The position numbers were made by a program, and so were the translations under genes. A stretch of DNA of 64,000 bases from Oculina patagonica (taxonomy: Eukaryota): assembly GCF_052425735.1 (NCBI RefSeq), contig NC_135767.1, positions 6,386,001 through 6,450,000 of the forward strand. Reading direction: 5' to 3'. Below, in pieces: positions 2,511 to 58,870 of this stretch (positions are counted from its first letter, which is position 1; every line of letters starts with the position of its first letter). A model generated the notes under the pieces. It ran no database searches, was not told the DNA's origin, and was given only the letters and a program-made list of their open reading frames with translations.

Positions 2511-2561
2511 TCAATGGTTCAATTTGCTTGTGTAGTTTCCTTCTCCAGTAAAGTTCGCCAT
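2511..2561 (-). pseudogene. 5' stub of a fourth short-tailed GPCR copy
   Basis: The reverse complement reads MANFTGEGNYTSKLNH*, matching the N-termini of the three intact copies. Its upstream flank (2562 onward) aligns with the flank of the 5382-6293 gene. The rest of the CDS is absent. Confidence 0.85.
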
Positions 2562-17497: not shown

Positions 17498-17529
<32 letters not shown>

Positions 17530-17545
17530 ACTGACTGACTGACTG

Positions 17546-17577
<32 letters not shown>

Positions 17578-32215: not shown

Positions 32216-32314
32216 CATAAAGCCGCGGTTCCACTGGGCTCCATAATCAACACGTGACTAACAAACACAAGAGGCTTGGGACCAAGTGTAAACCGAATGT
32301 AACACGTGACCTAC

Positions 32315-32380
32315 CATTACAGTTTGGTTTCTTCATTACAGCTGCCATATTGTGAGGATCAGAGGAGCAGTCTTGCTTTT
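32315..32380 (-). pseudogene. Fused (chimeric) exon relic of a second copy of the multidomain gene
   Basis: caacag|AAAAGCAAGACTGCTCCTCTGATCCTCACAATATGGCAGCTGTAATGAAGAAACCAAACTGTAATG|gtaggt. The 5' end plus ~70 bp of upstream intron match exon 36292-36378. The 3' end (DCSSDPHNMAAVMKK) matches the end of exon 35266-35889 (DCSFDPENMAAVMQK). Confidence 0.75.
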
Positions 32381-32599
32381 CTGTTGAAAACAAGCGAGTT
32401 TCCAAATAAGATCATTTTGCAATTCCTTATACGTACTATATCTTATACTAGGAATTTCATAATGAAAGTGAGTGCTGGCTAGATCGAGGAATTAACGATT
32501 ACACTACATTATTTCTGAAGTTTGGAGGTACAGTATGTTAATGAATGGCTTGTTTGGAGTTCTGGATTTCATTTTTGGCGATTATTAAAGAAACAATCG

Positions 32600-33480: not shown

Positions 33481-33989
33481 CAATTATTTACTGTATGCTT
33501 TTAATAAACACTTCTTCACGCAATCGTGTGACAAACGGTAATACAGGCTATCGTGTGACATAATAAAAATATACAGAATCGTAGACCGCATGCGCTAAAT
33601 CTGACATCCAAAATTTGGCTCCGAACCTCATACACAACACAGAATACCCAACACACACAGGACTGCCAGAATAGTGTGCTGTCTCGCTAAGGCGGGCCAG
33701 CAACAAGTTTGTTGTTGCTACTTGCTTTCGATTTTGTTGTTGTTAATGTTAATGTTGTCGCATGGTACTTGAGCAGTTTGAAACACACACAGAAAGAATT
33801 AAAGCAGAGGCGGCGGAGCGTTAATTTTGAAACGTGTGAGGGCCCATCGTACTCCAAGCCAAGCACATACCCCCCACCCCCGGGGGGGACGCATCCCCCC
33901 ACCTAAATTTTCAAATGCTTTTTACAGTGTCCGGTGTGTCCGTAATCGATTTGTGACAATCCATAACTAGGCAGTACAGACGATCTTAC

Positions 33990-34897
33990 TTCATGGTGCT
34001 TTTTGGGTTGTTCTTTAGACGCCGGAGGGTAGAAAATGTATGCTTTGAAGTCGCCGATGCCTGTCAAATACAATCTTAACAGATTGTTGACTTTTCCTAG
34101 TAGCGTTTTGGGGAAAGGAGTTTTGTTGAAAGTTCTACATCATATTATCCCGCCAAGCACTGTCCTGATAAAACGATTTTTATCTTGACAAACAATTGTA
34201 TGCGGCACTAGCGATACTTTTGGCACTGAAATGTGGTGGGGGGGGGGGGGAGGAGGGCTGACCCCCCAAAAAATTTTGTTGGGGGCTACGGCCCCCCCTG
34301 CCCCCTGCTCCGCCGCCTATGTAAAGTTTTCAAAATTAAAAGGACACGACACATGACATCAAATAGATGACTGAGAACAACAGAAACTAGTAGGACAACT
34401 TGGAGGGAAATCACTTCACGAGACGAGACTGCTTGTGTCAGAGAACAAACCTTCTAAAACGAGTAAAGCCGGTTTAGATAAACTGCTTGTCAAATATGTC
34501 GCGAAGCTGCAATAATAATCGCCTTGATCCTCATATTGAAAGCTGTCAATCTTCAATTGGCTTCCATATCGTTCCATTGACGTTCCGTTCTTAAACCACG
34601 TGATCTTCACTTGTAGTGGACTGGACGCGTTGCATGTCAATATGGCTGGGGCGTTCTCCTTTAACGTCTGGGGGACTGGGTTTAAGGTGACTATCGGTGG
34701 ACCTACATAGAGCAAAATAATAAACCAGTATTTTTATGACTAGCTAATTACAAACAAAAAATAAACAACAAACGAGCCATCAACAAAGAAAAACAAACAG
34801 ACAGGCCGACAAACTAACAAATAACTACACAACCAAACAATAAAGACAGCCAGGCGAACAGACAAACAGGCAGGCGAACAGACAAACAGGCAGGCGA

Positions 34898-34936
<39 letters not shown>

Positions 34937-37900
34937 AACAGACAGACACAGATATACAGACACGGGCTGACAAATAGACAGGGTGAAGGACAAACAAACA
35001 AACAAACAACTAACAAACAAAATACAGGTAGATAGACAGACTGAGAAACAGGCAAAGTAATATATATAAAGCTTTTCCGAAGCGTGTACGAGAAGTAAAT
35101 TCGTATAGAAAAAAAACTACCTAGAATTTACATTTTACACAATGAAGAGATTACAAAATGGTTGAAAACTGTAACACTATCTATCGTATGACATGACTGC
35201 CTTACAATCATTACCGTAAGCAAAACGCGAGAAAAGTTTGAAACTTACTGAAACACATGACTTACCAATACAACTCGAGTACTTCTGCATCACAGCTGCC
35301 ATATTCTCAGGATCAAAGGAGCAGTCCGCTTTCAACTTCTCACTTGCATTAAGCTTCTCCTGCCGGTCATACAAAGGTACTAAGCACTGTGCACTTGGGC
35401 ACGATGGGTCGCTACTGGCTCGTGCGGGCTCTGGAGAATCATCCTTTTTACAAAACTTTACAGCTTCGTCATAAGATGTCCTGATATCATTACAATCGTC
35501 GCGTGAAATTAATTTAAAATTTGCCCTGTTTTCAGTTTTTCCCCACCGGTCGCTGTCTGTCACGCGAATTTTTAAATCAAATTCGTCGCCATCCTTAAAC
35601 ACAAAGTCTTGCGTTACTTTTAATTGCCCACTCTTACGATGAATGCAGAAATAATTCAGTGGCTCGTATTTGCCGGCCTCTTCGCACACGTCAGCAATGT
35701 CACGCCGTCGTCGCTTTAGGCTGCCGCGTGACTGCTGTCCTGGTGTGACGACATTGTCAATGTAAAATATAAACGGTTGAACAAGGGAAGCCAGTTTCCC
35801 TGTAACGGTAACATTTGTGACAACAGTTCCTGGCTTGATATCATACGTCAGGTAAGCCGTCAGGTCACGAAGCTGCAGAGGATTTGTGTCTGTAAAAAGA
35901 GAATTATATGATTAATGATACTTATATTCGAATATACGGGTTTTAAAAGATTTTTTAAGTAATACTTATTCAAATTATATTATTCTATCTTTTATATTTT
36001 GTTATAGATTAATCGATTGTAAGTACGTTTGAATTTATGTGTACAAATTGTTAGCAAAATTTTATTTTTCTGTTTTGTTATTTCGTTGACTTGTTCTTAC
36101 TTTGTGGGCTTCCTGTAAAGTAGCTTTTTGCTAAGTGCAGTTCCACGTTAAATAAAGTATCTCTTATCTCAGTGTAGTTATATAATAAAACCCTCCACTA
36201 TTATTTCCGCTTATAACAAAAAAATGTTTTCCTATAATTATAGTACTCGGAATTATAATGAAAATACCAAAAACCCCTTCAGCCATCTCACCTAAATGCT
36301 GATGAAAAGGATCGAGAGCACTGCAGCAGTTAGTTGGCGCATAAACTACAACATTGCACCGCAGTCCTTTTTGCTTTTCTGTTTAGAAACAAGTGCGTTT
36401 CCAAAGAGGATCATTTTGTAATTCTTGGTACGTACTATATCTTACACATGTTTGTTATTGCTGTTTTTGTTGTTTTTAATGTTTGAACACGGTACCTGAG
36501 CAGTTGGAATTTCTTGTCATCCCTGTTTTGCCGAATGTCTGTTTCTTTGCTGGACATTTCTTACATTTCTTTTGACCTTGCTCGTCCTGGTATGTGTCCA
36601 AAGGACAACGCGCACAAACACTACTGGGAACGAAATGAAAACCAGGCACACAACCTGCAAAAAGGCAAAAAAAGTAGAGCTTTCCTGAAACCATTAAAAG
36701 CAAATTTACATTAGCTGCAATTCCCTTAACTGCAAACAGAAGGTAAGGTTAAAAGTTAGCTTTAAGTATCTTCGTTTCCAGGGTCTCTCGAACGAGAGGG
36801 GGCGGGAAAAAGAGACCCTGGAAACGAGGTTGAGTTTCAAGCCAGCGAGAGCTGGAGACCTTATGGAAAGACTAGAGTTCCATTCCTGCTACTCCTCCTA
36901 GCCGAAAGGGGTGCTACCATATTGTATTGCAAGCTACCTAATAACTTGCCGGTGGCACAGAAGGGTAGAGAGACATAATGAGAGCAGTGCAATGGCATTA
37001 AGAAGATCAGTGTCGTCTTTGAATACTATATTGTGACATAAGTCTTCGTAGTTTGTAGAAGTAGTACTTTACTTTACTTACTAGTAAGAAAAACACTTTT
37101 GAATCTTTATTTCACAAGAACGTATACTGTAAGTAATTCGTTGAAAGACTTTGTTCTGCCCTAAGTAAGTTCGAGTTCGTCTAAAAGCCTTGCTTTCGAG
37201 GCTCGTTAACATTCCTATCAGAACTTAAACGATATAAAAATTAAAATGGTCGATTTATAATGAAAATATAAATAAATTGATTAACATCTTACCGCATTTA
37301 GTGCTGGACGCCTTAATTGATCCCGCGGCACAGCAAGGCGGCGGTATATCCCCACCGCAACAGGATCGTTTGTCGGATATAGTGGATAAATTGTATTTTG
37401 TGTAAGTGACACCACCTTCAGTTATTTTTGGAGTGTTGTTGTCTATAAATCCCTTGTGATTAGATTTCGCTGTGTTTATACAACTTATAAGCTTCGAGGA
37501 GACTTGATCTTCCGGTATATTCTTTGATGCTGTAAATACAATTGGCAGTCGGAAGAAAATGTTGGTCGCCCCCGGTGGGGAGGCAGTTATATCTTCACTA
37601 GTAGTGGTCACTCCACTACATTCGGGAACAAGTGCAAAAATGCTAGATACGTTCCTAAAAAAGTCGGAAAACTCCGACTTGGACTTATTAATTGTGTTAC
37701 TTGTCAGGCCACCAGGGATCTGATAGTGAAATGTGAAGTCGACTTCGTAACATCTTTTAATATCGTAGTTTGCAATCAATGAGGCATCTGAAAAAAAATG
37801 AAACACTGTATTAAGCCATTGCTTAAATTTCCTGAGCACTACACGAAAAATGCCGGACTGAGATAAAACAAATCGGATCGAAACCTAAAATTTTTATTAA

Positions 37901-40900
37901 CAATTGCTATATTAGAGCACTGAAACTATTACAAGCGTCTTTGGCTGCGGATGGCCAGGATGGAAATAGATTGCAACTTGAAAAGTTAAGGCTAAACTTT
38001 TCAAGTTGTTTTCGCGCGTCTTCAATAAAAACTCGATATTTATATCCGTAGTTTGATTTCTATCCGCTATCCTTTTTTCATGGCTTAAGTTGTCTTACAG
38101 TAATTTCAGAACAGTTTAGACCAAAAATCTGCAAAATTCTTCGTGACGTTACTCCTTTAATGTTACTGTGGCTGGCACCCTCATGAAAGGGTATATTATC
38201 AAAGCTGTAAACTGTGTTGTTTACCATGTCAACAATTGCAATAACAGTCGAATAGTTGTAAAGCATTATGAATGAGTGTAGTTGTTGTTTAATTGCTACT
38301 AAACTTCACTCTTTAGCCGGGAGGTACCACTTCTTTCTTGTAGCTCACACGGAAAAGTTTTTTAGAGAGATTAGCGACAGGGAGGTTTACAGGAAAATTT
38401 TTATCAAAGCTGACTCACAGATGCACATATGAGAAAACGAAATACAGCTATCCTAACGAGCGTGACGTCACCGATACATCACTTACTAAAAAAAGCGTAC
38501 ACATCTTGTGCCCAGGTTCCACCTGTTCCGTTTACACATCTCGTCGAGCTCCCGTACTTTTTGTACGTCATGTGAGCCTGCGGTCCTGACCAGCACTCTC
38601 CAGCGTTCTGCACTCCAAAAACGGAGTACCCACCCTTCTCTGCGGCCAGAGCGCACTTCTGAACAGCTTGGCTATCATGTCGCCAGTTACCAAGCTGTAT
38701 AGGCATGGTTCGATTATAGGATTCATTAAAACATCCAATATGGTAAAAACTGTTTGGTGTGATACTTGCAGAACAGTTGGACTTGCTTGTCATCCCTGTC
38801 TTTCCGAATGTACCTGTATTAACTGGACAATTCTCACAAGACGTCTGACCTTGCTTATTCTGATAAGTATCGGAAGGACATCGGACACAAGAACTGCTGG
38901 GAACGAAATGGAATCCAGTCACGCAACCTACACACAAAAAAACAAAACCATTCTTAGAAATAAAAGTTTTTGGAACTTTTCCTGAATGTTCCCTACCAAG
39001 CCCTTATTCCGGAAAAATGACAAAAAAAGATTGTTCACCGTGCTTGCAAAAGAAATATGATTGGCTAATTTTACGCCATTTATACTTCTACTGGTACTAA
39101 TCACGCGCGTTTTTCCATCCAGCCTCGTTATATTTTGCGGTAGCTGGAAGCAAAGTTTGGTAAAGTATATTTAGAAATTCTCCAGCATATGAAACAGTGT
39201 AACATATAATTTATGGAAAAATCGCACAATTTAAAACAACATTGACTCAAAACTTTCCTTGAGTCTCTGTTTTCAATGTCGAGATTTGCGTCCTCGAGTA
39301 CCAGTTTTGTCAACGCTTTTTGCTACAACTTTTTTTTTCTTAGAACCTTTTTTCAAAACTCGTTACTTAAAGAGGATAATTTGAAAACCAAAATTATGCA
39401 GTAAAAAATATAGGTCATCGTGCTTGCTTACGAAAAAACGACGATTTATCTGTAGGGCGTATAGAAAAAGCCACCATTATGTTTATGTGCGCGTTAATTA
39501 CGCGCAAAAGGTTGCACAGTGAGGATTCGCAATGCAATACTAAGGAATCTCCTTAGGAGTTGAAGTGATTTGTAAACACTAAAGTCAATTCTAATGCAGA
39601 AATGATTGTGCAAGATATCAGTCTTGAAAGCATTTGAATAATTTCGTGCAACTTGTGGAAAGCCCTACCATAACCTGTCTTGTAGTATTACAATTCCCTA
39701 TATCACATTCTGTAACGAGTATAGTTAAATTCGGATTAAGTTCCCATGGTCCCTTAAGTTTTTTTTTCAAACGTTTTTAAGCGCATATTAACCAATTAAG
39801 CCCCATGAGTGCCAACAATAAATTTCTCCTCACAATATCAGTACATAAACAAGAGAACAGGTTGTGAGAATTGACAAATGATCACTAATAAAGGAAAAAG
39901 TACTTTGATTGTTTAACACATTCTCCAGCTAATACTTAAGACAAAATGTATGAAAATAAGTAGAGAGAATTTGTGTTTTGACATTGGGGCCTAAAGGGTT
40001 AAAACACCTCTTCTTACCGCATTTAGTGCTGGAGACATTGACTGAGCCCACGTTACAGCAAGGCGGCGGTATATCCCCACCGCAGCAGGACCTCTTGTGG
40101 GATATTGTGGATAAATTGTATTTTGTGTAAGTGACATCCCCCTCAGTTATTGTAGGAATGCGGCTGTCTATAAATCCCTTGTAGCTAGATTTCACCGTGT
40201 TTATGCAGTTTGTGAGCTTTGAGGAGACTTGATCATCAGGCACATTACTTGATGCTGTAAATATCACTGGTACTTTGAAGAAAACACTGTTCACCCCTGG
40301 CGGAGAGGATGTTATTTCTTTCCTGGTAGTGTTTACTCCAAGGCATTGCTGAACAGTTGTAAGAAGGTTGGTCATGGTCTGAAATAAGCTGGAAAACTTA
40401 GTTGTGGTATTTGCAATTGTGCTGTTTGTTAAACCGCCTTGGATTTGATAGTGAAATGTGAAGTCGACTTCGTAACATCTTTTGATGTCGTAGTTTCCAA
40501 TAAACGAAGCATCTGAAAATACACATTAAACACTATTACTATGATTTCAAAGCAATTATTAAAGCACCCTTAAGTATCAGTTATCAGCTATTAATATACA
40601 ATCTTCGTTCACTGTCCAAAATCCACGCGCGCAATTGGTTAAAATAGATCACGTGATTTTGCTTTACCTGTCGTCAGCAAACTCAGACAGTGCAGTATTG
40701 ACAATAATGCACGAAAATCGTGCATTATTGAAGGTGTCTTCAGCTTCAAAGCTTGTAGAAGTGGAAGAAAAGTATATTCCTCAAATTATCAACGATCCAA
40801 TACCAAACAAAATCGAAGAGGATAACAACTTGAAGCGCTTTCATGTTCAAAGGTAAACTGCAGCTCAATAAATACATTTTTGTGTGCGATTGACTTGCTT

Positions 40901-43900
40901 GTAGTTGCTTGATTGTGAAAGCCATCGACTTGCATTGAACAAGCTTCTCGCTGACTGTATTTATGAACGACCACAGCTGATGAACGATTTTATGAACCAT
41001 TTTAAGTTTTATTTCTGTACGGCTAATTTGTGATTTTTATATTATTGATGTAATCCCGTGTAATTATGTACTACTACACTTCTTATTTTTAAACATTAAG
41101 TTTGTTGTTTGAAGTTCGTTAAGTCGATGATCGCTTGCAGTTCGATGCAGTGTACTCAGATTGTATATTAAAAGGGTTAGAGTCTGTTCGTTCGTGTTTT
41201 GTTGACAAATACACGCACTTGCTGGCCTCACAATGAACTCAAAATTTTCAATACTGCACTCGGCTACGCCTCGTGCAGTATTGAAAATTTCTCGTTCATT
41301 GTGCGGCCAGCGCGTGCGTGTATTTGTCAACAAAACACTCACAACAGTCTCTAACCCATAATTGCAACACAGTACATCATACTACAGTACATCATACTAT
41401 AGTCGAAACCCCCCCCCCCCCCCGTGAGAAAACATCCTTGGGACTAGAAAAGGGAACACTTCTAATGAAAGGTTATAAAACTGTAGTGTTTGTATGCGGC
41501 TTAGACCATGACTAAGTGTCCACTTAGGAGAGGTGTCTGCTTATGGGAGGTTAAAAATGTGGTGTTTGTATGTGTCCCCTTGGGAGAGGTGTCCATTAGC
41601 GGAGGTTTGGAAGTGATTTTAAAGGGACTGTGTCACGGCTAGGTTAATTTTATGTTGTTACATTTTGTCAAATATTCGCTATGAAACCTAATGTTTGTAA
41701 AATAAATAATTTATGATTCTACATGACAAAACCATAGCTTTATTGCAGCCAAATATGTCTCCCGGGCGTTATGAATTTAAAGTAAAAAGCAGACAAGATT
41801 ATCTTTTAAACCTGTTCCGCCGGACCATATTTCAAAAATCAATATCGTAATCCGTTTCAATCTTCGACACTTTTCGCCATCCGTACCTTCTTTTGCATTT
41901 GGTGTGTTATTTCAAATATTTCTTCACTGTTTTAAGTGGTTATGTTACACATTTAAACAAATTTGATGGTCATTTCCTATGCCTAAATTTGGCTAAAATC
42001 CGTGACACGGTCCTTTTAAAGTTACTTCGTTACACGTTTAACATAACAGCTGACACAAACTTGATTTAATACCTGCAGAACAATTGGACTTGCTTGTCAT
42101 CCCTGTCTTGCCGAATGTACCTGTATTAACTGGACAATTCTCACAAGACGTCTGGCCTTGCTTGTCCTGATAAGTATCGGAAGGACATCGGATACAAGAA
42201 CTGCTGGGAACAAAATGGAATCCAGGCATGCAACCTACACACAAAACAAAACAAAAAACATTTCTTAGAAATAAAAGTTGTTGAAACTGTCCCTGAATGT
42301 TCCCTGCCAAGCGCTGTTTCGAAAGATAGGTCACCGTGCTCGCAAAAGCAATATGATTGGCCATTGTTACGCCATTTATACTTGTACTGGTTCTAATCAC
42401 GCGCGGTATTCCATCGGGCCTCGTTGTATTTTGCGGGAGCTGGAAGCAAAGTTTGGTATAGTAAAGGTAAAAATTATAGGCCATATCATATAACAATGTC
42501 ACATATAATGTATGGAAAATCGCACAATTTAAAACGACATTGACTCAAAACTTTTCTTGAGTCGCTGTTTTCAATGTCGAAATTTGCTTCCTAGAGTACC
42601 AGTTTTGTAAACGCTTTTTGTTTCATCTTTTTTCTTTATAAGAACCTTTTTAAAAACTCGTAACTCAAAGAGGGTAATTTGGACACCAAAATTATGCAGT
42701 AAAAAATATAGGTCACCGTGATGGTTCACGATATAGAAAAAGCTGCCATTTTGTTTATGTGCACGTTAAGGAAGGAATCCTAAAGAGACTGTGTCGCGGC
42801 TGAGATAAATTTCTTTAGTTACGTTTTGCCAAATATTCGCTATTAAACTTAATGTTTGCAAAGAAATTACTTCTATGGATCTAAATAACAAAAGCATAGT
42901 TTTATTGCAACCAAATTTGACTCCCGGGCGTTATGAATTAAAGTTACAAGCAAACGAGATTAACTTTGGAACTGTTCAACCCAACAATATTTTAAACACC
43001 CAAAGTTTGAAATGTTCCGTCACCGTTTTAAAGGGTTATTCTTTATATTTTACCGAATTTGATTGTCATTTCCCATGCCTAAATTTGGTTAAAATCCGTG
43101 TCACAGTCCCTTTAAATGTTGAAGTGTTTTGTAAACAACTGCAGAAATGATTGTTCAAGATATCATTCTCTTCTCTTGGATCAAGTTCCCATTCACTATG
43201 ACGCGCGCACTTTTTTTAGTTCCATTTCAGCCATTGAAGAAGAGGCAACAGCCTCGAAACATATCATCTTTTATGTTTTTTTTTTTTCAATGTTTTTAAG
43301 TGCATATTTAAATACAACTCTTCTTACCGCATTTAGTGCTGGAGACATTGGCTGAGCCCACGTTACAGCAAGGCGGTGGTATATCCCCACCGCAGCAGGA
43401 TCTCTTGTCGGATATAGTGGATAAATTGTATTTTGTGTAAGTGATACCACCTTCAGTTATGCCAGGAGTGATGTTGTCTATAATTCCCTTGTGATTAGTT
43501 TTTGCTGTGTTTATACAGTTTGTGAGCGTTGAGGAGACTTGATTATCAGGCAAACTACTCGACGCTGTAAATATCACTGGTACTTTGAAGAAGACACTGG
43601 TCGCCCCTGGCGGAGTGGATGTTATTTCTTTCCTGGTGGTATTTACTCCAATGCATTGGGGAACAACTGTAAGAAGATTGGTCATGGTCTGAAATAGGCT
43701 GGAAAACTCAGATGTGGTATTTGCAATGGTGCTGTTTGTAAGGCCGCCAGGGATCTGATAGTGAAATGTGAAGTCGACTTCGTAACATCGTTTGATATCG
43801 TAGTTTCCAATCAACGAAGCATCTGAAAAGAAACATGAAACAGTTCTATGCAATTTTTTTTCAAGATTCTTTCTTACACTACTGGAGAGGTAGTTAATCA

Positions 43901-46847
43901 AATAAGCCCAAAACGAGGTAGTCAATATTGGCATCGATGAAAAAGATTGATAGAAAATAGCGGGTTGCTGTGAAAACCGTAGGCACCGTCTCCTGCATCT
44001 TCAGTGTTATGGTCAGCAGGGGACGTTAAAGAACAAACACACTTATCGTAAAGAGTAGCGCATGTAGTTACCGCCGGTGTTGTGGTCTGGTCTTTGCCCA
44101 TTGCACTGTGCGTACTGTTGAAATACTCGGAAATATTACCTATATAAGCTACTCTTCAAATCAGAGGGTAAATAATAAATGTGATGTAAAAGTGAATTGG
44201 GAATCTTGTCGGGTTAAAGAAGCTATGTCACGAGGATTTCGCAGAGTTTTGGTCTAAATGTTCTGAAATTAGTGGTAGGCAACTTAACCCACGAAAAACA
44301 TTACCTTTGAACATCTAAAGGAAGATACTAAAACCTTAATTTGTGGATAGAAATCAAACTACGGCTATAAATATCGATTTTGTGAAGACGCGCGGAAACA
44401 ACTTCAAAAGTTTAGCCTCAATGTTTCAAGTTGCAATCTATTTCCATCCCAGCCATTCCAAGCCAAAGAAGCTTAGTAACCGTTTCAGTGTTAAAATATA
44501 GCAGTTGGTAATAAAAATGGACCATTATTTTTTAGGTTGTTTACTACACAAATATAAATTTTATCTGTTCAAAAATCTGTAAAAAATCCTTGACGAAGCC
44601 CCTTTAAGCTTACATTTCAAGTTCGACATTGTTAACCCGTGACAATTTTCCATTGTCTAAACCATTACTAAGCTACGCGAACTCCTTATTCCTTTTCCAC
44701 TGGACCTTATTTACTGATTTGTGAACAATCTAACATCCGACACGAAACAATGAAACTGAGCTATTTTGGTGATAAAAGTTGACGGGGTTCAACTTGTGAA
44801 GATTTTGCAGAGAAACAATACATTTCCGTTGTTGCCAACGAGACAGCCGAGCCAAGAGGCGAGGCTGTCGAGGCGGCAGAATCATAGAGCCGTGTGCGTA
44901 TGAGTATATAGGCAGAGAAAATCTTAAGTTCTGCGTAAGGGACTTTTTTTTTACCATATTTGGGTGTAAGTAAACCCCATATTTGGGTTGTATTGTTCTT
45001 CCCAACTGGTTCCCAGTCTCTCACTCCTTGCTAGAGAGCAAATGACCAAAATGGCGTCCACGCGGCTCGCTGTTCAAATTTTCAATGTGGTCATTCATCC
45101 CTTTACCGATAAATACACCTTTGGGAAATTATAAATCGAAAGAGAATACCCTACAGAATATTCGACCGCCGAAAAAATGAACATCAAGGTCTTCAAAGCG
45201 ATGAAATAATCTTTCGACTTTGGAGTCTTTTGATTTACGATCGAAGAGAGACATGAAAATCAAAAGCGGACTGTTGACTTCAAATAGAGTTTTCTTGACT
45301 TATGAGAATGCTGAAGTCGGGTAAATGCTTCCTTTTAATTAGTGTTGATTGTGTTTATAGTAATTGTTTGACCGATGATTTATTTCAAATCAAATACCGT
45401 TTATATTTTATTTGGCACGCATTTTCGCTCCGCGTAGGAATAACATCAATACAAAGCGACGCTCACTAAAATTACTGCATGTCATACACACAAGAAAGTC
45501 AAAAGTTTTTTGCTTCTAACGGCAAATGTAATGTTAACTTAAATAAAATTTTTGTCTCCAAATAATCCTTGACCGTTCAAGTTTTGTTTTCTGTTCAAAT
45601 TTTTCAAGTTTTGCGTAACTTGAACATGACACTTCGCATGCGAGACTGAAATCTGACCCGTGCATTACTGTCTCTGATTACTGAAAATTATTTTTAAAAA
45701 AGCATCTTAGCAGTTTTGATTTTGGGATTTGATTTATAAGAAGTTCTTGAAGTGCAACTATCCCTTTTGTGGACGGAAACATTTTAACCATCGCGTATTG
45801 TATTTAAAAAAACAGTGATTAAACCTCATTTATTGCCTACATTTTGTGACATTTTAACGTTGAAAAGAATTTAAAGATTTGTCAAGAGTTATCAATCTGT
45901 CAAACCCGTAGCCTGCGTAGCAGACATCTGTGTATCTTTTTTAGTGTGTTTAAAAGAGTGCGCGATCGCGAGAATACGCGCACTGGAAACTACGGCGCCT
46001 GCTACGCAGGCTATCAAGCCTGTGTCATTTATGAACACCAGAGAAATAGCACTTTTTTCGCATATTACCTAAAATACAACAGTTCTATCAAAAACGATTC
46101 AATATCTGTTCTTATGAACAAACATGAGTATTTCGCTCGTTGGCACTTACCGATAGGTACAACTAGTTAAATATATACTAGCCATGTGACCCGAAAACAA
46201 AGAGGCCTAGGAACAATTTGACCTTATTTTCTCGACTGCCGACAACTGATACCCTATTACTGATTTGTATTACAGTTCATTTTAGGACTTAAGTAAATAA
46301 CATTTCATTTCACTATCTGTTCTTTAAAAGACGAAATGAACAGAGTGATTATCGCAATATCGTTAGAAAAGGTTAATAAATTGTGTAAGACTAACGACAG
46401 ATTGGTGAGAGTTGCATTGAAGGTTTGTAGTTGAGCTGTTTGGCTTTACTTCCGCCCATAAGAATTTGGCTCCTGACCAATTTGCATAGTGAAGCGAAGT
46501 TGATCAGGCTTCGTCTCGTTGCTTTAATTGACTGCGTAAGAAAGGCTTTCTTTGGTCTATTGAAGTTTCACACAGTATTTTTATCCATGACAATCAATCC
46601 GTCGCGAATGTAATGTGAAAACAGTCGATTGTGTTGATTGTGTTCGATTTCCAAAGGTTCTAAGCGTGAAAACATGTCAGTTTCGCTGTGTTCCTTTCTC
46701 GAGCACTTAAATTCGATTTTAAAATCATTCTCCTATTTACGCGGGATAGTTACGTCTAGATCTTCGCTTACCTGTAAAGAATCGAGTTTGTATCAGGAAA
46801 AACACGACGAAAGTTGACGATAAAACCACTGTCCCTTTAGAATACAT
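33990..46847 (-). CDS. Secreted/cell-surface multidomain protein: signal peptide, 3x[unrecognised 165-aa domain + GCC2/GCC3 (ephrin-receptor-like) Cys repeat], WSC-like module, cadherin-like domain with furin site, Cys-rich segment, Ig domain; 3' end unresolved
   Basis: GT-AG exons joined by phase-1 introns: 46772-46847 (MYSKGTVVLSSTFVVFFLIQTRFFT), 43328-43822, 42073-42234, 40018-40512, 38487-38927, 37293-37787, 36496-36654, 36292-36378, 35266-35889, 34451-34702, 33990-34060. Total 3357 nt, open. Motifs CxxCPxDTYQDxQGQxxCxxCP, HIGCFNE..CA..A..G..VFGVQNAGECW, and LTC..ITWFKNG..LKI..DQGDYYC. Confidence 0.8.
34745..35055. repeat. Low-complexity (ACAG/AAAC)n tract
   Basis: Directly visible; source of spurious CLSV-repeat ORFs. 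Confidence 0.9.
36772..36832. mobile_element. Small hairpin MITE
   Basis: tcgtttccagggtctct ... agagaccctggaaacga. Confidence 0.65.
41623..42015. mobile_element. TTAA-flanked non-autonomous DNA transposon (Kolobok-like)
   Basis: TTAA|AGGGACTGTGTCACGG...CCGTGACACGGTCCTT|TTAA. Confidence 0.75.
42784..43111. mobile_element. TTAA-flanked non-autonomous DNA transposon (Kolobok-like)
   Basis: AGAGACTGTGTCGCGG...CCGTGTCACAGTCCCT|TTAA. Absent from the paralogous intron position near 39550. Confidence 0.72.
43965..44180 (+). mobile_element. SINE fragment with a Nin/Deu-type conserved core
   Basis: aaaaccgtaggcaccgtc...ggacgttaaagaacaaacacacttatcgtaaagagtag...ccggtgttgtggtc resembles the Nin/DeuSINE central domain (from memory). 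A-rich end aaataataaat. Confidence 0.6.
44218..44603. mobile_element. Second TTAA-flanked element family; related fragment at ~37870-38160
   Basis: ttaaagaagctatgtcacgaggattt ... aatccttgacgaagcccctttaa. Confidence 0.55.
45909..46013. mobile_element. Short MITE
   Basis: TAGCCTGCGTAGCAG...CTGCTACGCAGGCTA inverted ends. Confidence 0.75.
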
Positions 46848-53297: not shown

Positions 53298-54800
53298 CTA
53301 AAGTTTCGTTTCCTCGTAACTGTTCCACGCAGGTTCTTTCTCATTAGTCAATTCAGCAACAGTTAGTTTGTTGTCCAATGTGTTTACGTTTGATGATAAT
53401 ATTGGCAATGACCTGGTTCTCGAGAAATTCTTCCCTGTTGCATTTTGACGACAGTTTGTGAATGTCTCGAGGAAGTTTTCATCCAGCGACGTTGATCGCA
53501 CAATTTTAAGCTCCGTGGTATCTTTAGGTAATTTAGTATCACGTTGAATGTGTTTCTTTCTTGGGGCATTTTCAATCTGAACTGTGACAACTAGTTTGTT
53601 GTGTTGTTCTGTGAAGACCTTATCGTTTGCTATCTTCGATGGAGCTGATCTGGGTCTTTCCTCCACTGTCTCAATCGATCTTCGCCGAACCGTATCCGAA
53701 CAAATCGTTGCACCGCAAGAGTCTGATCTTACCAAGCGGGGTTGTGTTTGCCCGATTTGAAGCTCTTCAACATCTAGCGATGCCACGGAATAGCGACGTC
53801 GCCTAGTTTGACGCACAGTGCGAGCTGCTGGCTGGATTTTTTGAGGCTTTCTGCACCTTAACAGCTCCAGCGCAGCTTTCCTTAAGCGGTGGTCTCTATA
53901 AAAGTACAGCAGTGGATTGAATAGAGAGTTTAAGAGAAGCATTGTTTGTGCCCACTGAAAACTAGAACCGTCGCGGGAAAAAGGCCTTATCGCGTACAAA
54001 AGACTGAAGAGAATGCTTGGAACACCCGAGATACAAACGAAAAGTGTTATCCAGAAAGTAGTGTAAGCAATCTTTGTTTCAAGCTTCGCTTTTGCCAGTG
54101 CAATCACTGTGCGACGGATTTGCGTTCGGTTCTGCTTTCGCACTCCGAGATAAACCTTAACATAAAAGTATAGTATAAATAAAAGGCACGCAAACCAGAA
54201 AATGCACAGTATAATCTTCACCGCTAAGATCAGTGTATGACGGACGCCAACGGTTTCCAATATTACTACTGGAGGAATCGTTAGTAATGTGAAGAGCCAT
54301 GCAACTCTCACGTACTTCTTTAGACGGTCTCTTGTAATTATTATCTTGTATTTCATCCATTTGACTATAGCCACGTACCTCTCCCAAGCAATAAGAAGCA
54401 AATGTAGAAACGACGCAAAGTAAACAGTGTACATCACAAAGACACCTATGTTACGTATCGTACATATAACATCCTCAAATAAAATTCCCTGCAAAAGTAG
54501 CGCTTTAAAAGTGATTGTCAGTGGCATGGATACAGCGCCCACCAAAAGATCAGTTACAGCCAAACTAGACAACAGGATGTTTGAATTCTTTTTCAGTTCT
54601 CTTCTCGTCTTCAATGCTATTATCACCAAGAGGTTTAACAGAATGGTAACGGGACAAGCAATGATCGTGACGCCAAGAATAATCTGAAGCGAAACTGTAC
54701 GATTTAAGTCCCAGACGTATTGTGGCGACTTCGGGCAATAAAACACTGACCTGGTTTCGTTGAAGGAATTGGCCAATGATTCTGTATTATTCACCGTCAT
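53298..54800 (-). CDS. Intronless class A orphan GPCR with a long C-terminal tail, copy 1
   Basis: 500-aa ORF with LN (TM1), LAVTDLLVGAVSMP, AWERY and NSLFNPLLY; ~200-aa basic/Ser-rich tail ending EETKL. Confidence 0.93.
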   Translation of the reverse strand: MTVNNTESLANSFNETRSVFYCPKSPQYVWDLNRTVSLQIILGVTIIACPVTILLNLLVIIALKTRRELKKNSNILLSSLAVTDLLVGAVSMPLTITFKALLLQGILFEDVICTIRNIGVFVMYTVYFASFLHLLLIAWERYVAIVKWMKYKIIITRDRLKKYVRVAWLFTLLTIPPVVILETVGVRHTLILAVKIILCIFWFACLLFILYFYVKVYLGVRKQNRTQIRRTVIALAKAKLETKIAYTTFWITLFVCISGVPSILFSLLYAIRPFSRDGSSFQWAQTMLLLNSLFNPLLYFYRDHRLRKAALELLRCRKPQKIQPAARTVRQTRRRRYSVASLDVEELQIGQTQPRLVRSDSCGATICSDTVRRRSIETVEERPRSAPSKIANDKVFTEQHNKLVVTVQIENAPRKKHIQRDTKLPKDTTELKIVRSTSLDENFLETFTNCRQNATGKNFSRTRSLPILSSNVNTLDNKLTVAELTNEKEPAWNSYEETKL

Positions 54801-55539
54801 GATTATTGATTATTGATAGGACGATTCCAGAGAATTAGATTCTTGATAGCTCGGGTCTGGTTTATGTTTCGTCTTGTCAAAACCTCTTAACACATAAAAT
54901 GTTGTTGCTAATGGTGCAATGTTGTTTTTCAATCAGCTTTTTGAGATTTTTTTCTCTTTTTTTTTTCGTTTTCCGGTAGCAAATAGATTTCCAGAGACCA
55001 GAATTAATTTCCTACTCATTTGAAATCAAGCTTTGTTCAGTGAGGATATCTATTGTGGGAAGTTCCTTGACTTCCTCATAGAACTCTCGTCACTCAGTTG
55101 TATAGTTCTTTTCTTTTCTGACCATACACCGTGAAGATTCTTTTGAGAGAAGTTTAATTTGCTTAGAATTTTTCCTCAGTTCTATTGTTTTTTGTTTTAT
55201 TTTAAGCATAAGTTGTAGCAATTAGCGCCGTTTTTTAGCATTGTGTGAAGTGAATTGACAGGAAATTTATTTCAGTATTTTTTTCAGATTTTTAGTTTCC
55301 ATACGCCTACAGTGGTTGCACCTAACAGGAACTCGGTTGAAACAGATATCTTTTCTCGGTAGAGTTCTTTCTCGCCCACATGTGTTGCAGGAAAATGTTT
55401 CCTACAAACGTAGTTTCTCATTAAAATTTGTTTTTATCCACAATTACTTCTTCCATGGACGCTTTTGTTTTTTTAAAAACAAAATGCAATCTTTAAATTC
55501 ACAAATTTACAATCGTTTTGAATAAGAAAACCATTGTAT

Positions 55540-55957
55540 AGACTTTAAAGCTGTCTTAGACGTTAAAGCTGTCTCGAGACGATATTAACGTCTAGTATAA
55601 AAACGGCAAATAACGGCAAAAAAAAAAACGGCAAAGACAGACGCCTTTAACGTCTTTAGCGTCTGAATGACGCTCTTATCGGACAGCTTTAACGTCTCAG
55701 ACGTTAAAGTCGTCTAGTATAAAAACGGGACGTCGTTAACTAGTATAAAAACAGTAAATAAGACAGACGCCTTTGACGTCTGATGGCTTTACGTCTTCGT
55801 GTCCAGTGTCCTCCGAGCGTCGAACCCAGTCTTTTTTATTTTTTTCTGAAAAGCTGTCTTCTAAATGCGTCCCGTTTTTATACCAGACGCCAATAACGTC
55901 TTAGACGTTAAAGTCGTCTAAACGACATTATCATCTCTAGCATAAAAACAGCCATAG
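55540..55957. repeat. AGACGT/ACGTCT-rich palindromic repeat (probable transposon relic)
   Basis: Repeated aacgtct(t/c)agacgttaaagtcgtcta and ctagtataaaaac units. Confidence 0.6.
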
Positions 55958-56039
55958 ATAACATTTCCGTCTTTCTATTTAACAATTAGACTACGAGCCC
56001 GAGTTTTCAACGAGGCGCAGATTTTGGACATGGAATAAA

Positions 56040-57172
56040 AACAAGGATGAATTTACACCCAAACTATACATTTCAAGTCTCAAACTGGCCGGTTTTGCTG
56101 GATCAATAGTGAAAATAAGCCTTAATCTACGTGGTGGTATTTCAACACAAGAGCCCAAATTCGTCCATTTCAGTGGCTCATGTAGGCTTTTCGTTTTCGA
56201 TTCTTTTGGACCAGGAGTGAAAATAAGGATGAATCCATGTGATGACATTTTTGCAAAAAGACCCAAACTGCACATTGCAACTCTCGAACTGGCCGGTTTT
56301 GCAGGATCTGGAGTAAAAATAAGCTTTAATCTACGTGGTGGTATTTCAACGCAAGGGCCCAAACTCGTCATTTTCATTGGATCATGTAGCACTTTCTTAC
56401 GCTATAATTCGTTTAGACCTGGAGTGACAATTAGGATAAATCCACGTGATGGCATTTTCCAAAAAGACCCAAACTGTATATTGCAAGTCTCACACTGGCC
56501 TGTTTTGCTGCATCTGGTGGGAGAATAAGCTTTTATCTACGTGGTGGTATTTCAACACAAGAGCCCAAAATAGTAATTTTTAGTGGCTCATTTATTCGAT
56601 TCTTTTGGAACTGGAGTGAAAATTAGGATAAATACTACTTATTAACCGAGAGTGAGGTCATTACAGGGGAATCTCAGACCGAGGCCTTGATGTATTGACC
56701 GAGCGATAGCGAGGTCAATACATCAAGGCCGAGGTCTGAGATTGCCCTGTAATGACTGAACGGACGAGGTTAATACGTTATTTATTATATGGCCTTTAAG
56801 CGCTATTCTAAACTGAAATATCTAAAAAACACCGAGGCGAAACTCGCTCTCGCTCTCTGTGGCTCTCTTCGTCGTTCATACTAAAGAAGTATCGGTATGC
56901 TTATATTTTTCTTTCAGTTGTTAAAAAGATAGTTACATTTTGTCGGTATTTATTGTCGTTCTCGCAATTGCGCTAGTAGCTTTTACTCACAACTCAAAAA
57001 ACCATGTAAAAACCTCCGAGCCGAGAAAATTTTTCATAATGCCCGGTCATTACAAGAAAATAATGCCCGCTCAGCAGCCAATCAGAGCGCGCGTACTATT
57101 GTAGCCATATAATAAATCAACGTGATTGCAATTTTCCAAAAAGACCCAAACTATAGATTTCAAGTCTCAAAA
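56040..57172. repeat. ~205-bp tandem repeat (about 3.5 units) interrupted by a ~480-bp insertion at ~56634-57116
   Basis: tacgtggtggtatttcaac at 56128, 56332 and 56538. The unit resumes (..acgtgattgcaattttccaaaaagacccaaact) after 57117. The insertion has a hairpin ggccttgatgtattgacc/ggtcaatacatcaaggcc. Confidence 0.8.
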
Positions 57173-57358
57173 TGACGGAAAGCACAAGCACAAGGATCAA
57201 AATTTGTCATTTTTGCGTGATTGTGCGTATGCTTGCGCTTGTGCTTGCGTCACTAGTGAAAACCAGGCTTAAGGTAGCCACAAATGTAATTTTAACTGCA
57301 TTAAAACATTGACAGAAATTAAATATTATATAATATATGGAGTCATGAAAACAACTGA

Positions 57359-58870
57359 TTAAAGCTTCCTTTCCTCGTAACTGTTCCACGCAAGTTTTTT
57401 GTCATTAGTCAATTCATGATCAGCATCAGTAAGTTTGTTGTCAAATGTCTTTATTAAGTTTGCTGATAATATTGGCAATGACCTGGATCTCGAAAAGTGC
57501 TTCCCTGCTGCATTTTGACGACAGTTTGTGAATGTCTTAAGGAAGTTTTCATTCAGCGACGTTGATCGCACAATTTTAAGCTCCGCCGTAGTATCTTTCG
57601 GTAATTCAGTATTACGGTGAATACTTTTCTTTCTTGGGGCATTTTCAATCTGAACTGTGACAACAAATTTGTTTTGCTGTTGTGAGAAGACCTTATCGTT
57701 TGCTAACTTCGGTGGAGCTGATCTGGGTTTTTCCTCCACTGTCTCAATCGATCTTCGCCGAACCGTTTCCGAACAAATCACAGCACCACAAGATTCAGAT
57801 TTTACCAAGCGGGGTTGTGTTTGTCCGATTTGAGGCTCTTCAACATCTAGCGATGCCACGGAATAGCGACGTCGCCTAGTTCGACGCACAATACGAGCTA
57901 TTGGCTGGTGTCTTTGAGGTTTTCTACACCTTAACAGCTCCAGTGCAGCTTTCCTTAAGCGGCGGTCTCTATAACAGTACAATAGTGGATTGAAGAGAGA
58001 GTTTAACTGTAGCATTATATCTGCCCATCGCAAAACAGAAGCCTCGAGGAGAAAAGGCCAAATTCCCCTGAACAGGTAAAGGAGAACTGTCGAAACGCCC
58101 GAGATAAAGACGAAAAGTGTTATCCAGAAAGTCGTGTAAGCAACCTTTCTTTCAAGCTTCGCTTTAATCAGAGCATTCACTGAACGGATTTGCGTTTGGT
58201 TCTGCTTTTGCACAACGAGATAAACCTTAACATAATAGTATACTATAAACAAAATGCCTGCAACCCAGAAACTGCTAACTAGTACATCCACGGCTAACAT
58301 AACTTCATAACGGACGCCAAAGGCTTCCATTACAGTCATCACAACAACGGTAAGTGATGTTGCCAGCCATGCAATTTTCGCGTACTTCTTTAGACGACCT
58401 TTTGTAACAATGACCATGTACTCCATCCATTTTACTATCGCGACGTACCTCTCCCAAGCAATGAGCACCAAATGAGAAAACGATACAATGTAAAGAGTAT
58501 ACAGCACAAAGGCACCTATGATACCTACTGTACAGATAATATTTTCAAATAAAATTCTTCGCAGAACTAACGCGTCTAAAGTAATAGTCAGCGGCATAGA
58601 TACAGCGCCCACTAAAAGGTCAGTCACAGCTAAACTAGATAGCAGAATGTGTGAATTATTTTTCAATTCTCTTCTCGTCTTCATTGCTATTATCACCAAG
58701 AGGTTTAACAGAATGGTAAAAGGGCAAGCGAATGTCGTGACGGCCAGAGTAATGTTAAGAGAAGTTGTTTGTTTTAAGTCCCAGATAAAATCTGGTGTCT
58801 TCGGGCAATAAAACACTGACCTGGTTCCGTTGAAGGAATTGGCGAGTGATTCTGTATTATTCACTGTCAT
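57359..58870 (-). CDS. Intronless long-tailed class A orphan GPCR, copy 2
   Basis: 503-aa ORF with the same motifs; TM6 Pro replaced by Ser (ISGVSTV); ends EERKL. Confidence 0.92.
   Translation of the reverse strand: MTVNNTESLANSFNGTRSVFYCPKTPDFIWDLKQTTSLNITLAVTTFACPFTILLNLLVIIAMKTRRELKNNSHILLSSLAVTDLLVGAVSMPLTITLDALVLRRILFENIICTVGIIGAFVLYTLYIVSFSHLVLIAWERYVAIVKWMEYMVIVTKGRLKKYAKIAWLATSLTVVVMTVMEAFGVRYEVMLAVDVLVSSFWVAGILFIVYYYVKVYLVVQKQNQTQIRSVNALIKAKLERKVAYTTFWITLFVFISGVSTVLLYLFRGIWPFLLEASVLRWADIMLQLNSLFNPLLYCYRDRRLRKAALELLRCRKPQRHQPIARIVRRTRRRRYSVASLDVEEPQIGQTQPRLVKSESCGAVICSETVRRRSIETVEEKPRSAPPKLANDKVFSQQQNKFVVTVQIENAPRKKSIHRNTELPKDTTAELKIVRSTSLNENFLKTFTNCRQNAAGKHFSRSRSLPILSANLIKTFDNKLTDADHELTNDKKLAWNSYEERKL

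What the first reader, a model, noticed from the sequence alone, without database searches (positions are those of the whole stretch)
33990..46847. Modular extracellular protein with an unrecognised 165-aa domain repeated three times by phase-1 exon shuffling
Seen: the ORF track shows only fragments, but 11 exons splice into one open frame of >=1119 codons starting with a signal peptide. Three exons are exactly 495 nt. Each encodes ASLIxNYDIKRCYEVDFTFHYQIxGG...C.GV...PPG...FFxxPxxFTAS...C(I)NT...RSCCGGDIPPPCC...SSTKC, and each is followed by a GCC2/GCC3-like Cys exon. One repeat also has a WSC-like module. The combination with cadherin-like and Ig domains is not one I recognise. Inference: the 165-aa unit may have a SEA-like fold, and the protein is a candidate adhesion, glycan-recognition, mucus or skeletal-matrix component.
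Basis: partly seen in the sequence, partly recalled or inferred. Interest (0 to 1): 0.74.

Follow-up and report, generated by a model that had tools for sequence, protein, structure and literature searches.

The report
Truncated coral adhesion-receptor copy, new domain
This stony-coral gene is real and expressed: it copies only the outer tip of an adhesion-type cell-surface receptor and repeats three times a 165-residue domain that no domain library describes, so it is a modestly new building block in a well-known kind of gene remodelling.

Summary
The core observation holds. On the minus strand, nine GT..AG exons (46847-34451) give one open frame of 1066 codons. Every internal exon is phase 1-1. 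Three exons are exactly 495 nt and 70-84% identical in protein. Each is followed by an Ephrin_rec_like (GCC2/GCC3) exon. WSC and Ig domains pass Pfam cut-offs. RNA-like contigs from public runs show three of the junctions.

The 165-aa unit matches no Pfam family. A profile search of 1.84 billion proteins found only 34 credible relatives, all exon-sized anthozoan fragments; one is a named Exaiptasia protein. AlphaFold2 (pLDDT 91) gives a ferredoxin-like alpha/beta sandwich with a Cys-rich tail. That is SEA-like in topology only.

The genome is Oculina patagonica. A paralogue about 650 kb away has the same signal-peptide exon, then WSC, one unit, Ephrin_rec_like, a cadherin-like exon, Ig, a true SEA domain, and GAIN/GPS/7TM. 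It is an adhesion GPCR, and its exon series is collinear in another coral. The window gene is a 5' partial duplicate of that receptor. It has the unit/Ephrin_rec_like cassette in three copies and no GAIN/7TM copy anywhere in the genome. Its function, soluble or single-pass ectodomain, is inferred.

The parts
46772..46847 (-). Exon 1: ATG plus a 25-codon hydrophobic signal-peptide-like leader, ending in phase 1
   Evidence: A homologous first exon of the paralogue (76% nt identity, same length and phase) lies at C10:5717065-5717153. No RNA junction was tested.
43328..43822 (-). Exon 2: unit A, 495 nt, phase 1-1, the 165-aa unrecognised domain
   Evidence: No Pfam hit. AlphaFold2 model with pLDDT 91.
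42073..42234 (-). Exon 3: Ephrin_rec_like (GCC2/GCC3) A, 162 nt, phase 1-1
   Evidence: Pfam PF07699, E 2.1e-9. Boundaries. A 490-nt contig of run X9 lies on 42073-42228 and leaves the genome near the acceptor (record 31).
40018..40512 (-). Exon 4: unit B, 495 nt, phase 1-1
   Evidence: A contig of run X3 (record 10) joins 40016-40150 directly to 38679-38925.
38487..38927 (-). Exon 5: Ephrin_rec_like B fused in frame to WSC, 441 nt. An 18-nt relic of a collapsed intron (AGTATCACACCAAACAGT-type, coding SITPNS) lies between them
   Evidence: Pfam PF07699 E 3.7e-9 and PF01822 E 2.7e-7. Unspliced contig over 38487-38872 (record 4). Relic donor and acceptor compared with exon 3 and with the paralogue's WSC acceptor.
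37293..37787 (-). Exon 6: unit C, 495 nt, phase 1-1
   Evidence: Joint 38487|37787 in runs X3, X4 and X9, and joint 37293|36654 in runs X1, X3 and X9, both GT..AG on the minus strand.
36496..36654 (-). Exon 7: Ephrin_rec_like C, 159 nt, phase 1-1
   Evidence: Pfam PF07699, E 6.5e-9. Joint with exon 6. Boundaries.
35266..35889 (-). Exon 8: 208 codons, phase 1-1. A beta-rich cadherin-like part with a conserved polybasic LKRRRR loop, then a Cys-rich helical part
   Evidence: No Pfam hit. ESM neighbours are cadherin clusters, score 0.90. 88% identical to the paralogue with dN/dS 0.37. AlphaFold2 model unusable.
34451..34702 (-). Exon 9: Ig domain, 252 nt, phase 1-1. This is the last exon shared with the paralogue
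   Evidence: Pfam Ig_3, E 2.9e-13. dN/dS 0.25 against the paralogue. Homology with the paralogue ends 13 nt past the donor.
34288..34386 (-). Candidate terminal exon (unverified): VSVVLSHLFDVMCRVLLILKTLHRRRSRGQGGP*, a transmembrane-like tail reached through a 64-nt intron. The alternative is read-through of the exon-9 donor to a stop after 11 codons, around 34418
   Evidence: Phase-1 acceptor with a pyrimidine tract. The Kyte-Doolittle 19-residue mean of 2.05 is the highest in the protein. No transcript evidence. A junction pattern was not found in JGI metagenome contigs.
33780..34321 (-). It is not part of the supported gene
   Evidence: At least 44 matches (73-87% identity) on many contigs of the same genome, from 472 candidates. 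A copy also lies upstream of the paralogue's WSC exon.

Best explanation
The locus is an expressed Oculina patagonica gene that arose by duplicating the 5' part of an adhesion-GPCR gene. It keeps the signal peptide and the distal ectodomain modules (WSC, the 165-aa unit, Ephrin_rec_like, a cadherin-like exon, Ig). It lacks the receptor's SEA, HRM-like, GAIN/GPS and 7TM parts. Inside it, the phase 1-1 cassette of unit plus Ephrin_rec_like was amplified to three copies. One duplication junction survives as an 18-nt in-frame relic of an intron that fuses Ephrin_rec_like B to WSC. The 165-aa unit is a domain that Pfam does not model. Apart from unnamed, exon-sized ORF fragments in environmental and other public assemblies (taken here to be anthozoan; their organisms were not established), its only identified holders are this coral and the sea anemone Exaiptasia. 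It is a glycosylated ferredoxin-like alpha/beta sandwich with SEA-like topology and no cleavage motif. It ends in a conserved SCCGGxxPPPCC...C knot that leads into the Ephrin_rec_like module. Inferred, not shown: the product is a secreted or single-pass, heavily N-glycosylated protein (26 sequons, 56 Cys). It would display the same binding head as the receptor in three copies. It would therefore act as a multivalent adhesion or recognition protein, or as a competitor for the receptor's extracellular partner, without G-protein signalling of its own.
For: Gene structure and open frame. Splicing and expression: exon-only coverage, GT..AG joints for exons 4-5, 5-6 and 6-7, and an unspliced exon 5, in runs of four studies. 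Purifying selection: dN/dS 0.33-0.53 among the units and 0.25-0.37 for the cadherin-like and Ig exons against the paralogue. Domains. Rarity of the unit: 35 hits in 1.84e9 representatives, all but one chance hit being ORFs of 342 aa or fewer, and one is Exaiptasia XP_028516384. Only 5 genomic matches exist in the own genome: three in this gene, one in the paralogue and one in its haplotig. Fold: pLDDT 91, pTM 0.84. Species. Paralogue: a homologous signal-peptide exon; WSC, unit, Ephrin_rec_like, cadherin-like and Ig exons at 74-82% protein identity in the same order; three SEA exons whose phases continue from the Ig donor, the first hitting Pfam SEA at E 3.7e-5; then GAIN_B, GPS and 7tm_2. The same 16 conserved blocks are collinear on one strand in another coral's contig. 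No SEA, GAIN or 7TM homologue lies in the 64-kb window. The paralogue's GAIN exon has no other copy in the genome. Intron relic.
Against: The 3' end is not established. It could be read-through, a TM-like mini-exon, or something unrecognised. The runs are labelled 'RNA?' by guess. That the paralogue is one transcript is inferred from exon phases and conserved collinearity, not from reads. No binding, localisation or proteomic data exist, so the adhesion or decoy role is inference. dN/dS of 0.3-0.5 is only moderate constraint. The Ephrin_rec_like C exon shows 0.98 on very few sites.
Confidence: 0.68

Rival explanations
1. It is still a receptor. The transcript continues past the Ig exon through a long intron to membrane or signalling exons that were not recognised, or to another gene's exons.
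For: The Ig exon ends in a phase-1 donor identical to the paralogue's. About 22 kb of minus-strand sequence lies between the Ig exon and the next recognised genes.
Against: tblastn with the paralogue's SEA-c, HRM-like, GAIN, GPS and 7TM peptides finds nothing in the window. The GAIN exon exists only at the paralogue and its haplotig. Homology with the paralogue stops 13 nt after the donor and is followed by a dispersed repeat. The downstream GPCR genes are intronless class-A receptors.
Confidence: 0.1
2. It is a young, transcribed but functionless partial duplicate on its way to becoming a pseudogene.
For: Partial duplicates that lose their 3' half are often non-functional. The 3' end has been replaced by a repeat insertion. 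A further degraded fragment of the cadherin-like exon lies at 32295-32378. The signal peptide is less canonical than the paralogue's.
Against: There are 1066 codons without a stop or frameshift across nine exons, although synonymous divergence reaches 0.25-0.56 among the units. dN/dS is 0.25-0.5. All splice sites are intact. Spliced contigs at 98-100% identity occur in several runs, and contigs at 90-95% identity occur in runs labelled as other organisms.
Confidence: 0.12
3. It is a structural component of the skeletal organic matrix or of mucus. The unit would then serve as a SEA-type mucin module.
For: The protein is secreted, Cys-rich and heavily glycosylated. The topology is SEA-like. WSC is a putative carbohydrate-binding module.
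Against: There are no Ser/Thr/Pro-rich mucin repeats and no acidic stretches in the 1066 residues. There is no SEA cleavage motif. No Swiss-Prot coral skeletal-matrix protein appears among the top 30 structural matches. The one coral skeletal proteome paper consulted mentions WSC only in a polycystin-like protein (PMC4890752). The closest relative is a receptor.
Confidence: 0.1

Closest known systems
The paralogous Oculina patagonica adhesion GPCR at C10:5.717-5.752 Mb, and its orthologue on ENA contig ctg90711 of another coral
   Same: A homologous signal-peptide exon, then WSC, the 165-aa unit, Ephrin_rec_like, the cadherin-like exon with the KRRRR loop, and Ig. These share the same exon phases. 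Identity is 74-88% in protein for the Ephrin_rec_like, cadherin-like and Ig exons. Nucleotide identity of about 80-84% extends through the intron between the cadherin-like and Ig exons.
   Different: The paralogue has one unit, and its WSC exon comes first. It continues into SEA, an HRM-like exon, GAIN/GPS and 7tm_2. The window gene has three unit/Ephrin_rec_like cassettes and a fused Ephrin_rec_like-WSC exon, and none of the receptor half.
SEA domain (Pfam PF01390; MUC1, MUC16, TMPRSS11D, ADGRG6/GPR126)
   Same: An extracellular, glycosylated alpha/beta sandwich of about 110-120 core residues with beta-alpha-beta-beta-alpha-beta order. It sits in a receptor ectodomain. A PPG..SVFF hairpin occupies the position of SEA's G|SVVV. 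The nearest protein-language-model neighbours of unit A are SEA clusters (0.84-0.87).
   Different: No sequence-profile match. Structural scores do not exceed those of unrelated ferredoxin-like proteins. Two residues separate G and S, and the motif is not conserved across the family. There are eight conserved Cys, including a C-terminal CC...CC...C knot that SEA lacks. A divergent family member shows no SEA neighbours. The paralogue carries a true SEA domain as well.
Unnamed ~140-aa alpha/beta module in bilaterian 'Sushi/SVEP1-like' and 'Ephrin type A/B receptor-like domain-containing' proteins, and the Sp38 domain of zona-pellucida-binding proteins ZPBP1/2 (AlphaFold DB)
   Same: These are the best structural matches found: Foldseek E 6e-5 to 1e-3 and TM up to 0.62 for the cluster representatives, and ZPBP1 at E 4e-4. 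Several of these proteins also contain Ephrin_rec_like or other Cys-rich modules next to the matched part.
   Different: Sequence identity is only 10-16%. Both sides are predictions. No sequence search links them. The Cys-knot tail is not shown to be shared.
Ectodomain-only or 7TM-less relatives of adhesion GPCRs
   Same: A receptor-derived extracellular module set is expressed without the seven-helix part.
   Different: Here the retained part is the distal head. The GAIN/GPS stalk is lost too, so no tethered-agonist mechanism can apply.

Membership tests
SEA domain (PF01390) | Match to the family's sequence profile | tested here: not met
   SEA is not hit by any of the three units or by any of 36 family members at E<=10. 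The first SEA exon of the paralogue, only 37 aa long, does hit it at E 3.7e-5.
SEA domain (PF01390) | Ferredoxin-like beta-alpha-beta-beta-alpha-beta sandwich | tested here: met
   AlphaFold2 model with pLDDT 91: E13-23, H30-52, E60-64, E76-87, H93-109, then short strands. The top matches are ferredoxin-like folds.
SEA domain (PF01390) | Structural similarity to solved SEA domains above the generic background | tested here: inconclusive
   MUC16 SEA (8vm1) E 0.018, TM 0.28. GPR126 SEA region Z 6.5. PCDH15 MAD12 Z 6.7. Unrelated top hits reach Z 8.1. MUC1 models give E 3e-3 to 9e-3.
SEA domain (PF01390) | G|S[VI]VV autoproteolysis motif in the beta2-beta3 hairpin (present in cleaving SEA domains) | tested here: not met
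   The units read PPG(A/V)(T/N)S(V/I)FF. Relatives read PPRESNVFF, SNSSLNFF and similar.
Adhesion GPCR (class B2) | GAIN domain with GPS motif followed by 7tm_2 | tested here: not met
   The window gene has no homologue of the paralogue's GAIN, GPS or 7TM exons in the window. The genome has no second GAIN copy. The paralogue itself meets the feature: GPS E 1.8e-12, 7tm_2 E 1.5e-20.
Ephrin_rec_like / GCC2_GCC3 (PF07699) | Profile match above the gathering score | tested here: met
   35.9-37.5 bits against a cut-off of 23.1 for all three exons.
WSC (PF01822) | Profile match above the gathering score | tested here: met
   31.1 bits against a cut-off of 27.8 in exon 5.
Immunoglobulin (Ig_3, PF13927) | Profile match above the gathering score | tested here: met
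   50.5 bits against a cut-off of 30 in exon 9.
Cadherin repeat (PF00028) | Profile match or cadherin fold | tested here: inconclusive
   No Pfam hit. 28 of the 100 nearest ESM-Atlas clusters are cadherin clusters, at about 0.90. The AlphaFold2 model from a 3-sequence alignment has pLDDT 34.
Coral skeletal organic matrix proteins | Identification in a skeletal proteome | not testable with these tools
   No proteome data were searchable by sequence. No coral skeletal-matrix entry appears among the top 30 Swiss-Prot structural matches. PMC4890752 mentions no such architecture.

The most novel reading that the evidence does not exclude
The unit plus Ephrin_rec_like cassette is the ligand-binding head of a hexacoral-specific adhesion GPCR. 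The window gene is a naturally evolved, trivalent soluble or tethered decoy or co-receptor that tunes that receptor. In addition, the unit is the cnidarian branch of an unnamed, metazoan-wide alpha/beta module that accompanies Ephrin_rec_like and Sushi domains and includes the ZPBP (Sp38) sperm-egg recognition domain.
Probability: 0.15. Interest if true: 0.7.

Novelty: new variant of a known kind. Interest (0 to 1): 0.5.

Why it matters
The finding gives a confident structural model and a 36-sequence alignment for a domain that domain databases lack. It places that domain in a defined setting: the distal ectodomain of a coral adhesion GPCR.

It also documents, almost base by base, how a modular extracellular gene is rebuilt. 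The steps are a partial duplication, amplification of a phase-1 cassette, and an intron collapsed to 18 translated bases.

A receptor next to a receptor-less, trivalent copy of its binding head is a natural experiment. It could be used to find the ligand of an orphan cnidarian adhesion GPCR.

It does not change any general principle. Exon shuffling and truncated receptor paralogues are well known, and the fold is common.

Tried and rejected
1. Sequence families for the unit. Pfam on the three units and on all 36 aligned relatives gave nothing. A profile against PDB sequences gave nothing.

2. Structure searches. Foldseek against PDB gave no match at E<=1e-3. VIA-align wide gave only generic ferredoxin-like matches at Z<=8.1. 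The ESM-Atlas shape search was generic apart from a ZPBP1 row.

3. ESM features. Unit A has SEA clusters as nearest neighbours. A divergent member (P0034) gave lipocalin-like noise instead, so the SEA lead is not robust.

4. P0033, a 1297-aa repeat protein at E 4.7e-4 in the representative search, was judged a chance hit.

5. AlphaFold2 of the cadherin-like exon with three sequences gave pLDDT 34 and is unusable.

6. Looking for spliced ORFs that would define the 3' end. All Ig-exon relatives were genomic read-through ORFs. The exon 9/10 junction pattern is absent from JGI metagenome contigs, which is uninformative.

7. Trying to see the public annotation of the locus through a neighbouring intronless GPCR. 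Records of this genome are withheld.

8. The unit phylogeny is unresolved except that A and B are sisters (95/95). P0032's placement is a long-branch artefact.

9. Literature. No paper was found that describes this architecture. The searches were few and keyword-based.

Full report
**1. What is in the sequence**

The feature lies on the minus strand. Translating between stops shows three long open segments that share a ~165-residue sequence. Their boundaries are identical. Each has an acceptor ...ttttcag|AT GCx TCx and a donor ...AAA TGC G|gtaag. The three exons are 43822-43328, 40512-40018 and 37787-37293. Each is exactly 495 nt and both ends are in phase 1.

The encoded units are 84% and 70% identical to the first. 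DNA similarity collapses within a few bases outside the exons. That pattern is expected if the coding sequence is maintained and the introns are not.

Pfam finds nothing in the units. It does find Ephrin_rec_like (the family formerly called GCC2_GCC3) in the exon after each unit, WSC in the second of these exons, and Ig_3 further downstream. All of these score above the curated cut-offs.

**2. Gene model**

Exon 1 (46847-46772) starts at an ATG, encodes a hydrophobic leader and ends in phase 1. Joining nine exons gives 3199 nt, which is 1066 open codons plus one base. The exons are 46847-46772, 43822-43328, 42234-42073, 40512-40018, 38927-38487, 37787-37293, 36654-36496, 35889-35266 and 34702-34451. 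Every intron is GT..AG and every internal exon is phase 1-1. The product has 56 Cys and 26 N-glycosylation sequons. Its only strongly hydrophobic segment is the N-terminal leader.

**3. Transcript evidence**

One read-laying run of at most 6 kb was allowed, and I spent it on 36400-42399. Four runs whose type is only guessed ('RNA?') were used. They cover the exons at depths of about 10-100 and leave the unique intron stretches at 0-2. Some intronic repeats are very deep.

These runs contain three joints. Joint 38487|37787 appears in three runs. Joint 37293|36654 appears in three runs, and both show GT..AG on the minus strand. One contig joins 40016-40150 to 38679-38925.

One 390-nt contig crosses 38487-38872 without a gap, so Ephrin_rec_like B and WSC are one exon. 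Another contig lies on exon 3 and leaves the genome at its acceptor.

Several contigs are 98-100% identical to the window, so the gene itself is expressed. Junctions 1-2, 3-4, 7-8 and 8-9 were not covered and rest on sequence and homology.

**4. The 3' end**

This stretch is a dispersed repeat with at least 44 scored copies on many contigs, so I do not accept them. Two ends remain possible:

- Read-through of the exon-9 donor, which stops after 11 codons.
- A 64-nt intron to a mini-exon (34386-34288) that encodes a TM-like segment (Kyte-Doolittle 2.05) followed by HRRRSR.

Neither is verified.

**5. The 165-aa unit**

A profile of the three copies was searched against 1.84 billion representative proteins. 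It found 35 hits. One, a 1297-aa repeat protein at E 4.7e-4, looks like chance. The rest are ORFs of 342 aa or fewer, mostly called on environmental contigs. Only one has a name, an uncharacterised Exaiptasia diaphana protein.

The 36-sequence alignment (A3) shows the conserved skeleton KRCY..F.Y.IPGG ... C..V ... SPPG..VFF.P..FTAS ... C ... SCCGG..PPPCC..GS...S..CG. In relatives from other species the unit is again followed by an Ephrin_rec_like exon.

With this alignment AlphaFold2 gives a confident model (pLDDT 91, pTM 0.84). It has a beta-alpha-beta-beta-alpha-beta sandwich followed by the Cys-rich tail.

Structure searches gave the following:

- Against solved structures, only generic ferredoxin-like matches appear. 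SEA-type modules (MUC16, GPR126, PCDH15 MAD12) score no better than unrelated enzymes.
- The best matches are in AlphaFold DB. They are an unnamed ~140-aa module in invertebrate Sushi/SVEP1-like and Ephrin_rec_like-containing proteins (E 6e-5, TM up to 0.62) and the zona-pellucida-binding proteins (E 4e-4). MUC1 SEA follows at E 3e-3.
- Language-model neighbours of unit A are SEA clusters at 0.84-0.87. Those of a divergent member are not.

The SEA autoproteolysis motif is absent. I conclude that the unit is a separate, undescribed family with SEA-like topology. Homology to SEA is not shown.

**6. Selection**

dN/dS is 0.33-0.36 among units A, B and C, with dS 0.25-0.56. It is 0.43-0.53 against the paralogue's unit. 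A and B are sister copies.

**7. Origin**

The genome is Oculina patagonica. An intronless GPCR in the window has named relatives of that species on a contig of the same length as the window's.

The unit profile finds only five places in the 529-Mb assembly: the three here, one at C10:5737629-5738117, and an identical copy on a small contig that is probably a haplotig.

Around the second locus, on one strand, the following lie in order:

- a first exon homologous to exon 1, encoding MYTKGTVVLWSILIALFLVQTQSTS with the same phase;
- WSC, one unit, Ephrin_rec_like, the cadherin-like exon and Ig;
- three small exons whose phases continue from the Ig donor (1 to 0, 0 to 2, then 2) and together read as a SEA domain, the first alone hitting Pfam SEA at E 3.7e-5;
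- an HRM-like exon, GAIN subdomain B, GPS and 7tm_2.

The same series of 16 conserved blocks, in the same order and orientation, is present on a 773-kb contig of another coral. A more distant species has WSC, unit, Ephrin_rec_like and Ig in that order. The paralogue is therefore an adhesion GPCR. Its status as a single transcript is inferred from exon phases and conservation, not from reads.

Similarity between the window and the paralogue runs from the Ephrin_rec_like exon through the cadherin-like exon, the intervening intron and the Ig exon at about 80-84% nt identity. It stops 13 nt after the Ig donor. The window holds no SEA, GAIN or 7TM homologue, and the GAIN exon has no other copy in the genome.

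Exon 5 preserves a duplication junction. The former donor of Ephrin_rec_like B (CAG|GTAT changed to CAA GTA TC) and the former acceptor of WSC (..AAACAG|) are separated by only a few bases. Together they form an 18-nt in-frame relic of an intron that is now translated.

The cadherin-like and Ig exons show dN/dS of 0.37 and 0.25 against the paralogue.

**8. Interpretation**

Shown: the gene structure, its expression, the domain content, the rarity and fold of the unit, and the derivation from the receptor gene.

Inferred: the protein is a secreted or single-pass, glycosylated molecule that displays the receptor's distal head, with the unit/Ephrin_rec_like cassette in three copies. It would act in adhesion or recognition, or as a competitor for the receptor's partner.

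A conserved LKRRRR loop in the cadherin-like exon may be a furin-type site. This was not tested.

**9. Known or new**

I found no paper describing this architecture. The searches were limited and the public annotation was not visible.

The processes involved are familiar: phase-1 exon amplification, partial gene duplication and receptor-derived ectodomain proteins. The fold is common. What is new is a domain family that lacks a model, and a well-resolved example of how it was multiplied.

No earlier follow-up of it exists.

Noticed in passing
window 33780-34321: A ~520-bp interspersed repeat with G/C homopolymer runs. It has at least 44 scored copies (73-87% identity) across the genome. Another copy sits just upstream of the paralogue's WSC exon.
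   Followed up: partly
window 44829-46167 and L007 (C10:5738575-5739936): A 1.37-kb element, 95% identical between intron 1 of the window gene and the intron after the paralogue's unit. It is in opposite orientation relative to the two genes. It is probably a recently active transposon.
   Followed up: no
window 32295-32411 (minus strand): A degraded fragment (58% aa identity over 29 residues) of the end of the cadherin-like exon. The similarity continues into what would be the start of its intron.
   Followed up: no
window 35700-35715 (LKRRRR in exon 8); L007 and L011 homologues: A polybasic furin-like motif is conserved in the cadherin-like exon of the window gene, the paralogue and another coral. 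In the other coral the surrounding loop is expanded and even more basic.
   Followed up: partly
window 37800-38200, 39400-39600, 40600-42200: Intronic stretches with summed contig depths of hundreds to thousands in all four runs. Many joints and loose ends occur at 37890, 38101 and 38137. These are transcribed repeat families inside the gene's introns.
   Followed up: no
window 325-9354 and 53298-62440 (minus strand): Two tandem arrays of intronless class-A GPCR genes (about 303 aa and about 500 aa) flank the gene. The 303-aa type belongs to a very large Oculina patagonica expansion whose members are named 'adenosine receptor A3-like'; dozens of its relatives lie on the same chromosome-scale contig.
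   Followed up: partly
G000:C1112:5197-8685 and 17284-17832: A small contig carries copies of the paralogue's unit exon (same score as the chromosomal copy) and GAIN exon (100% identical). It is probably an uncollapsed haplotig, so genomic copy counts are inflated by one.
   Followed up: no
window 34740-35120 and 17430-17740 (minus strand): Low-complexity repeats that read (CLSV)n or (SQSV)n in open frames, inside the intron between the cadherin-like and Ig exons and further downstream. The paralogue's equivalent intron has the same repeat.
   Followed up: no
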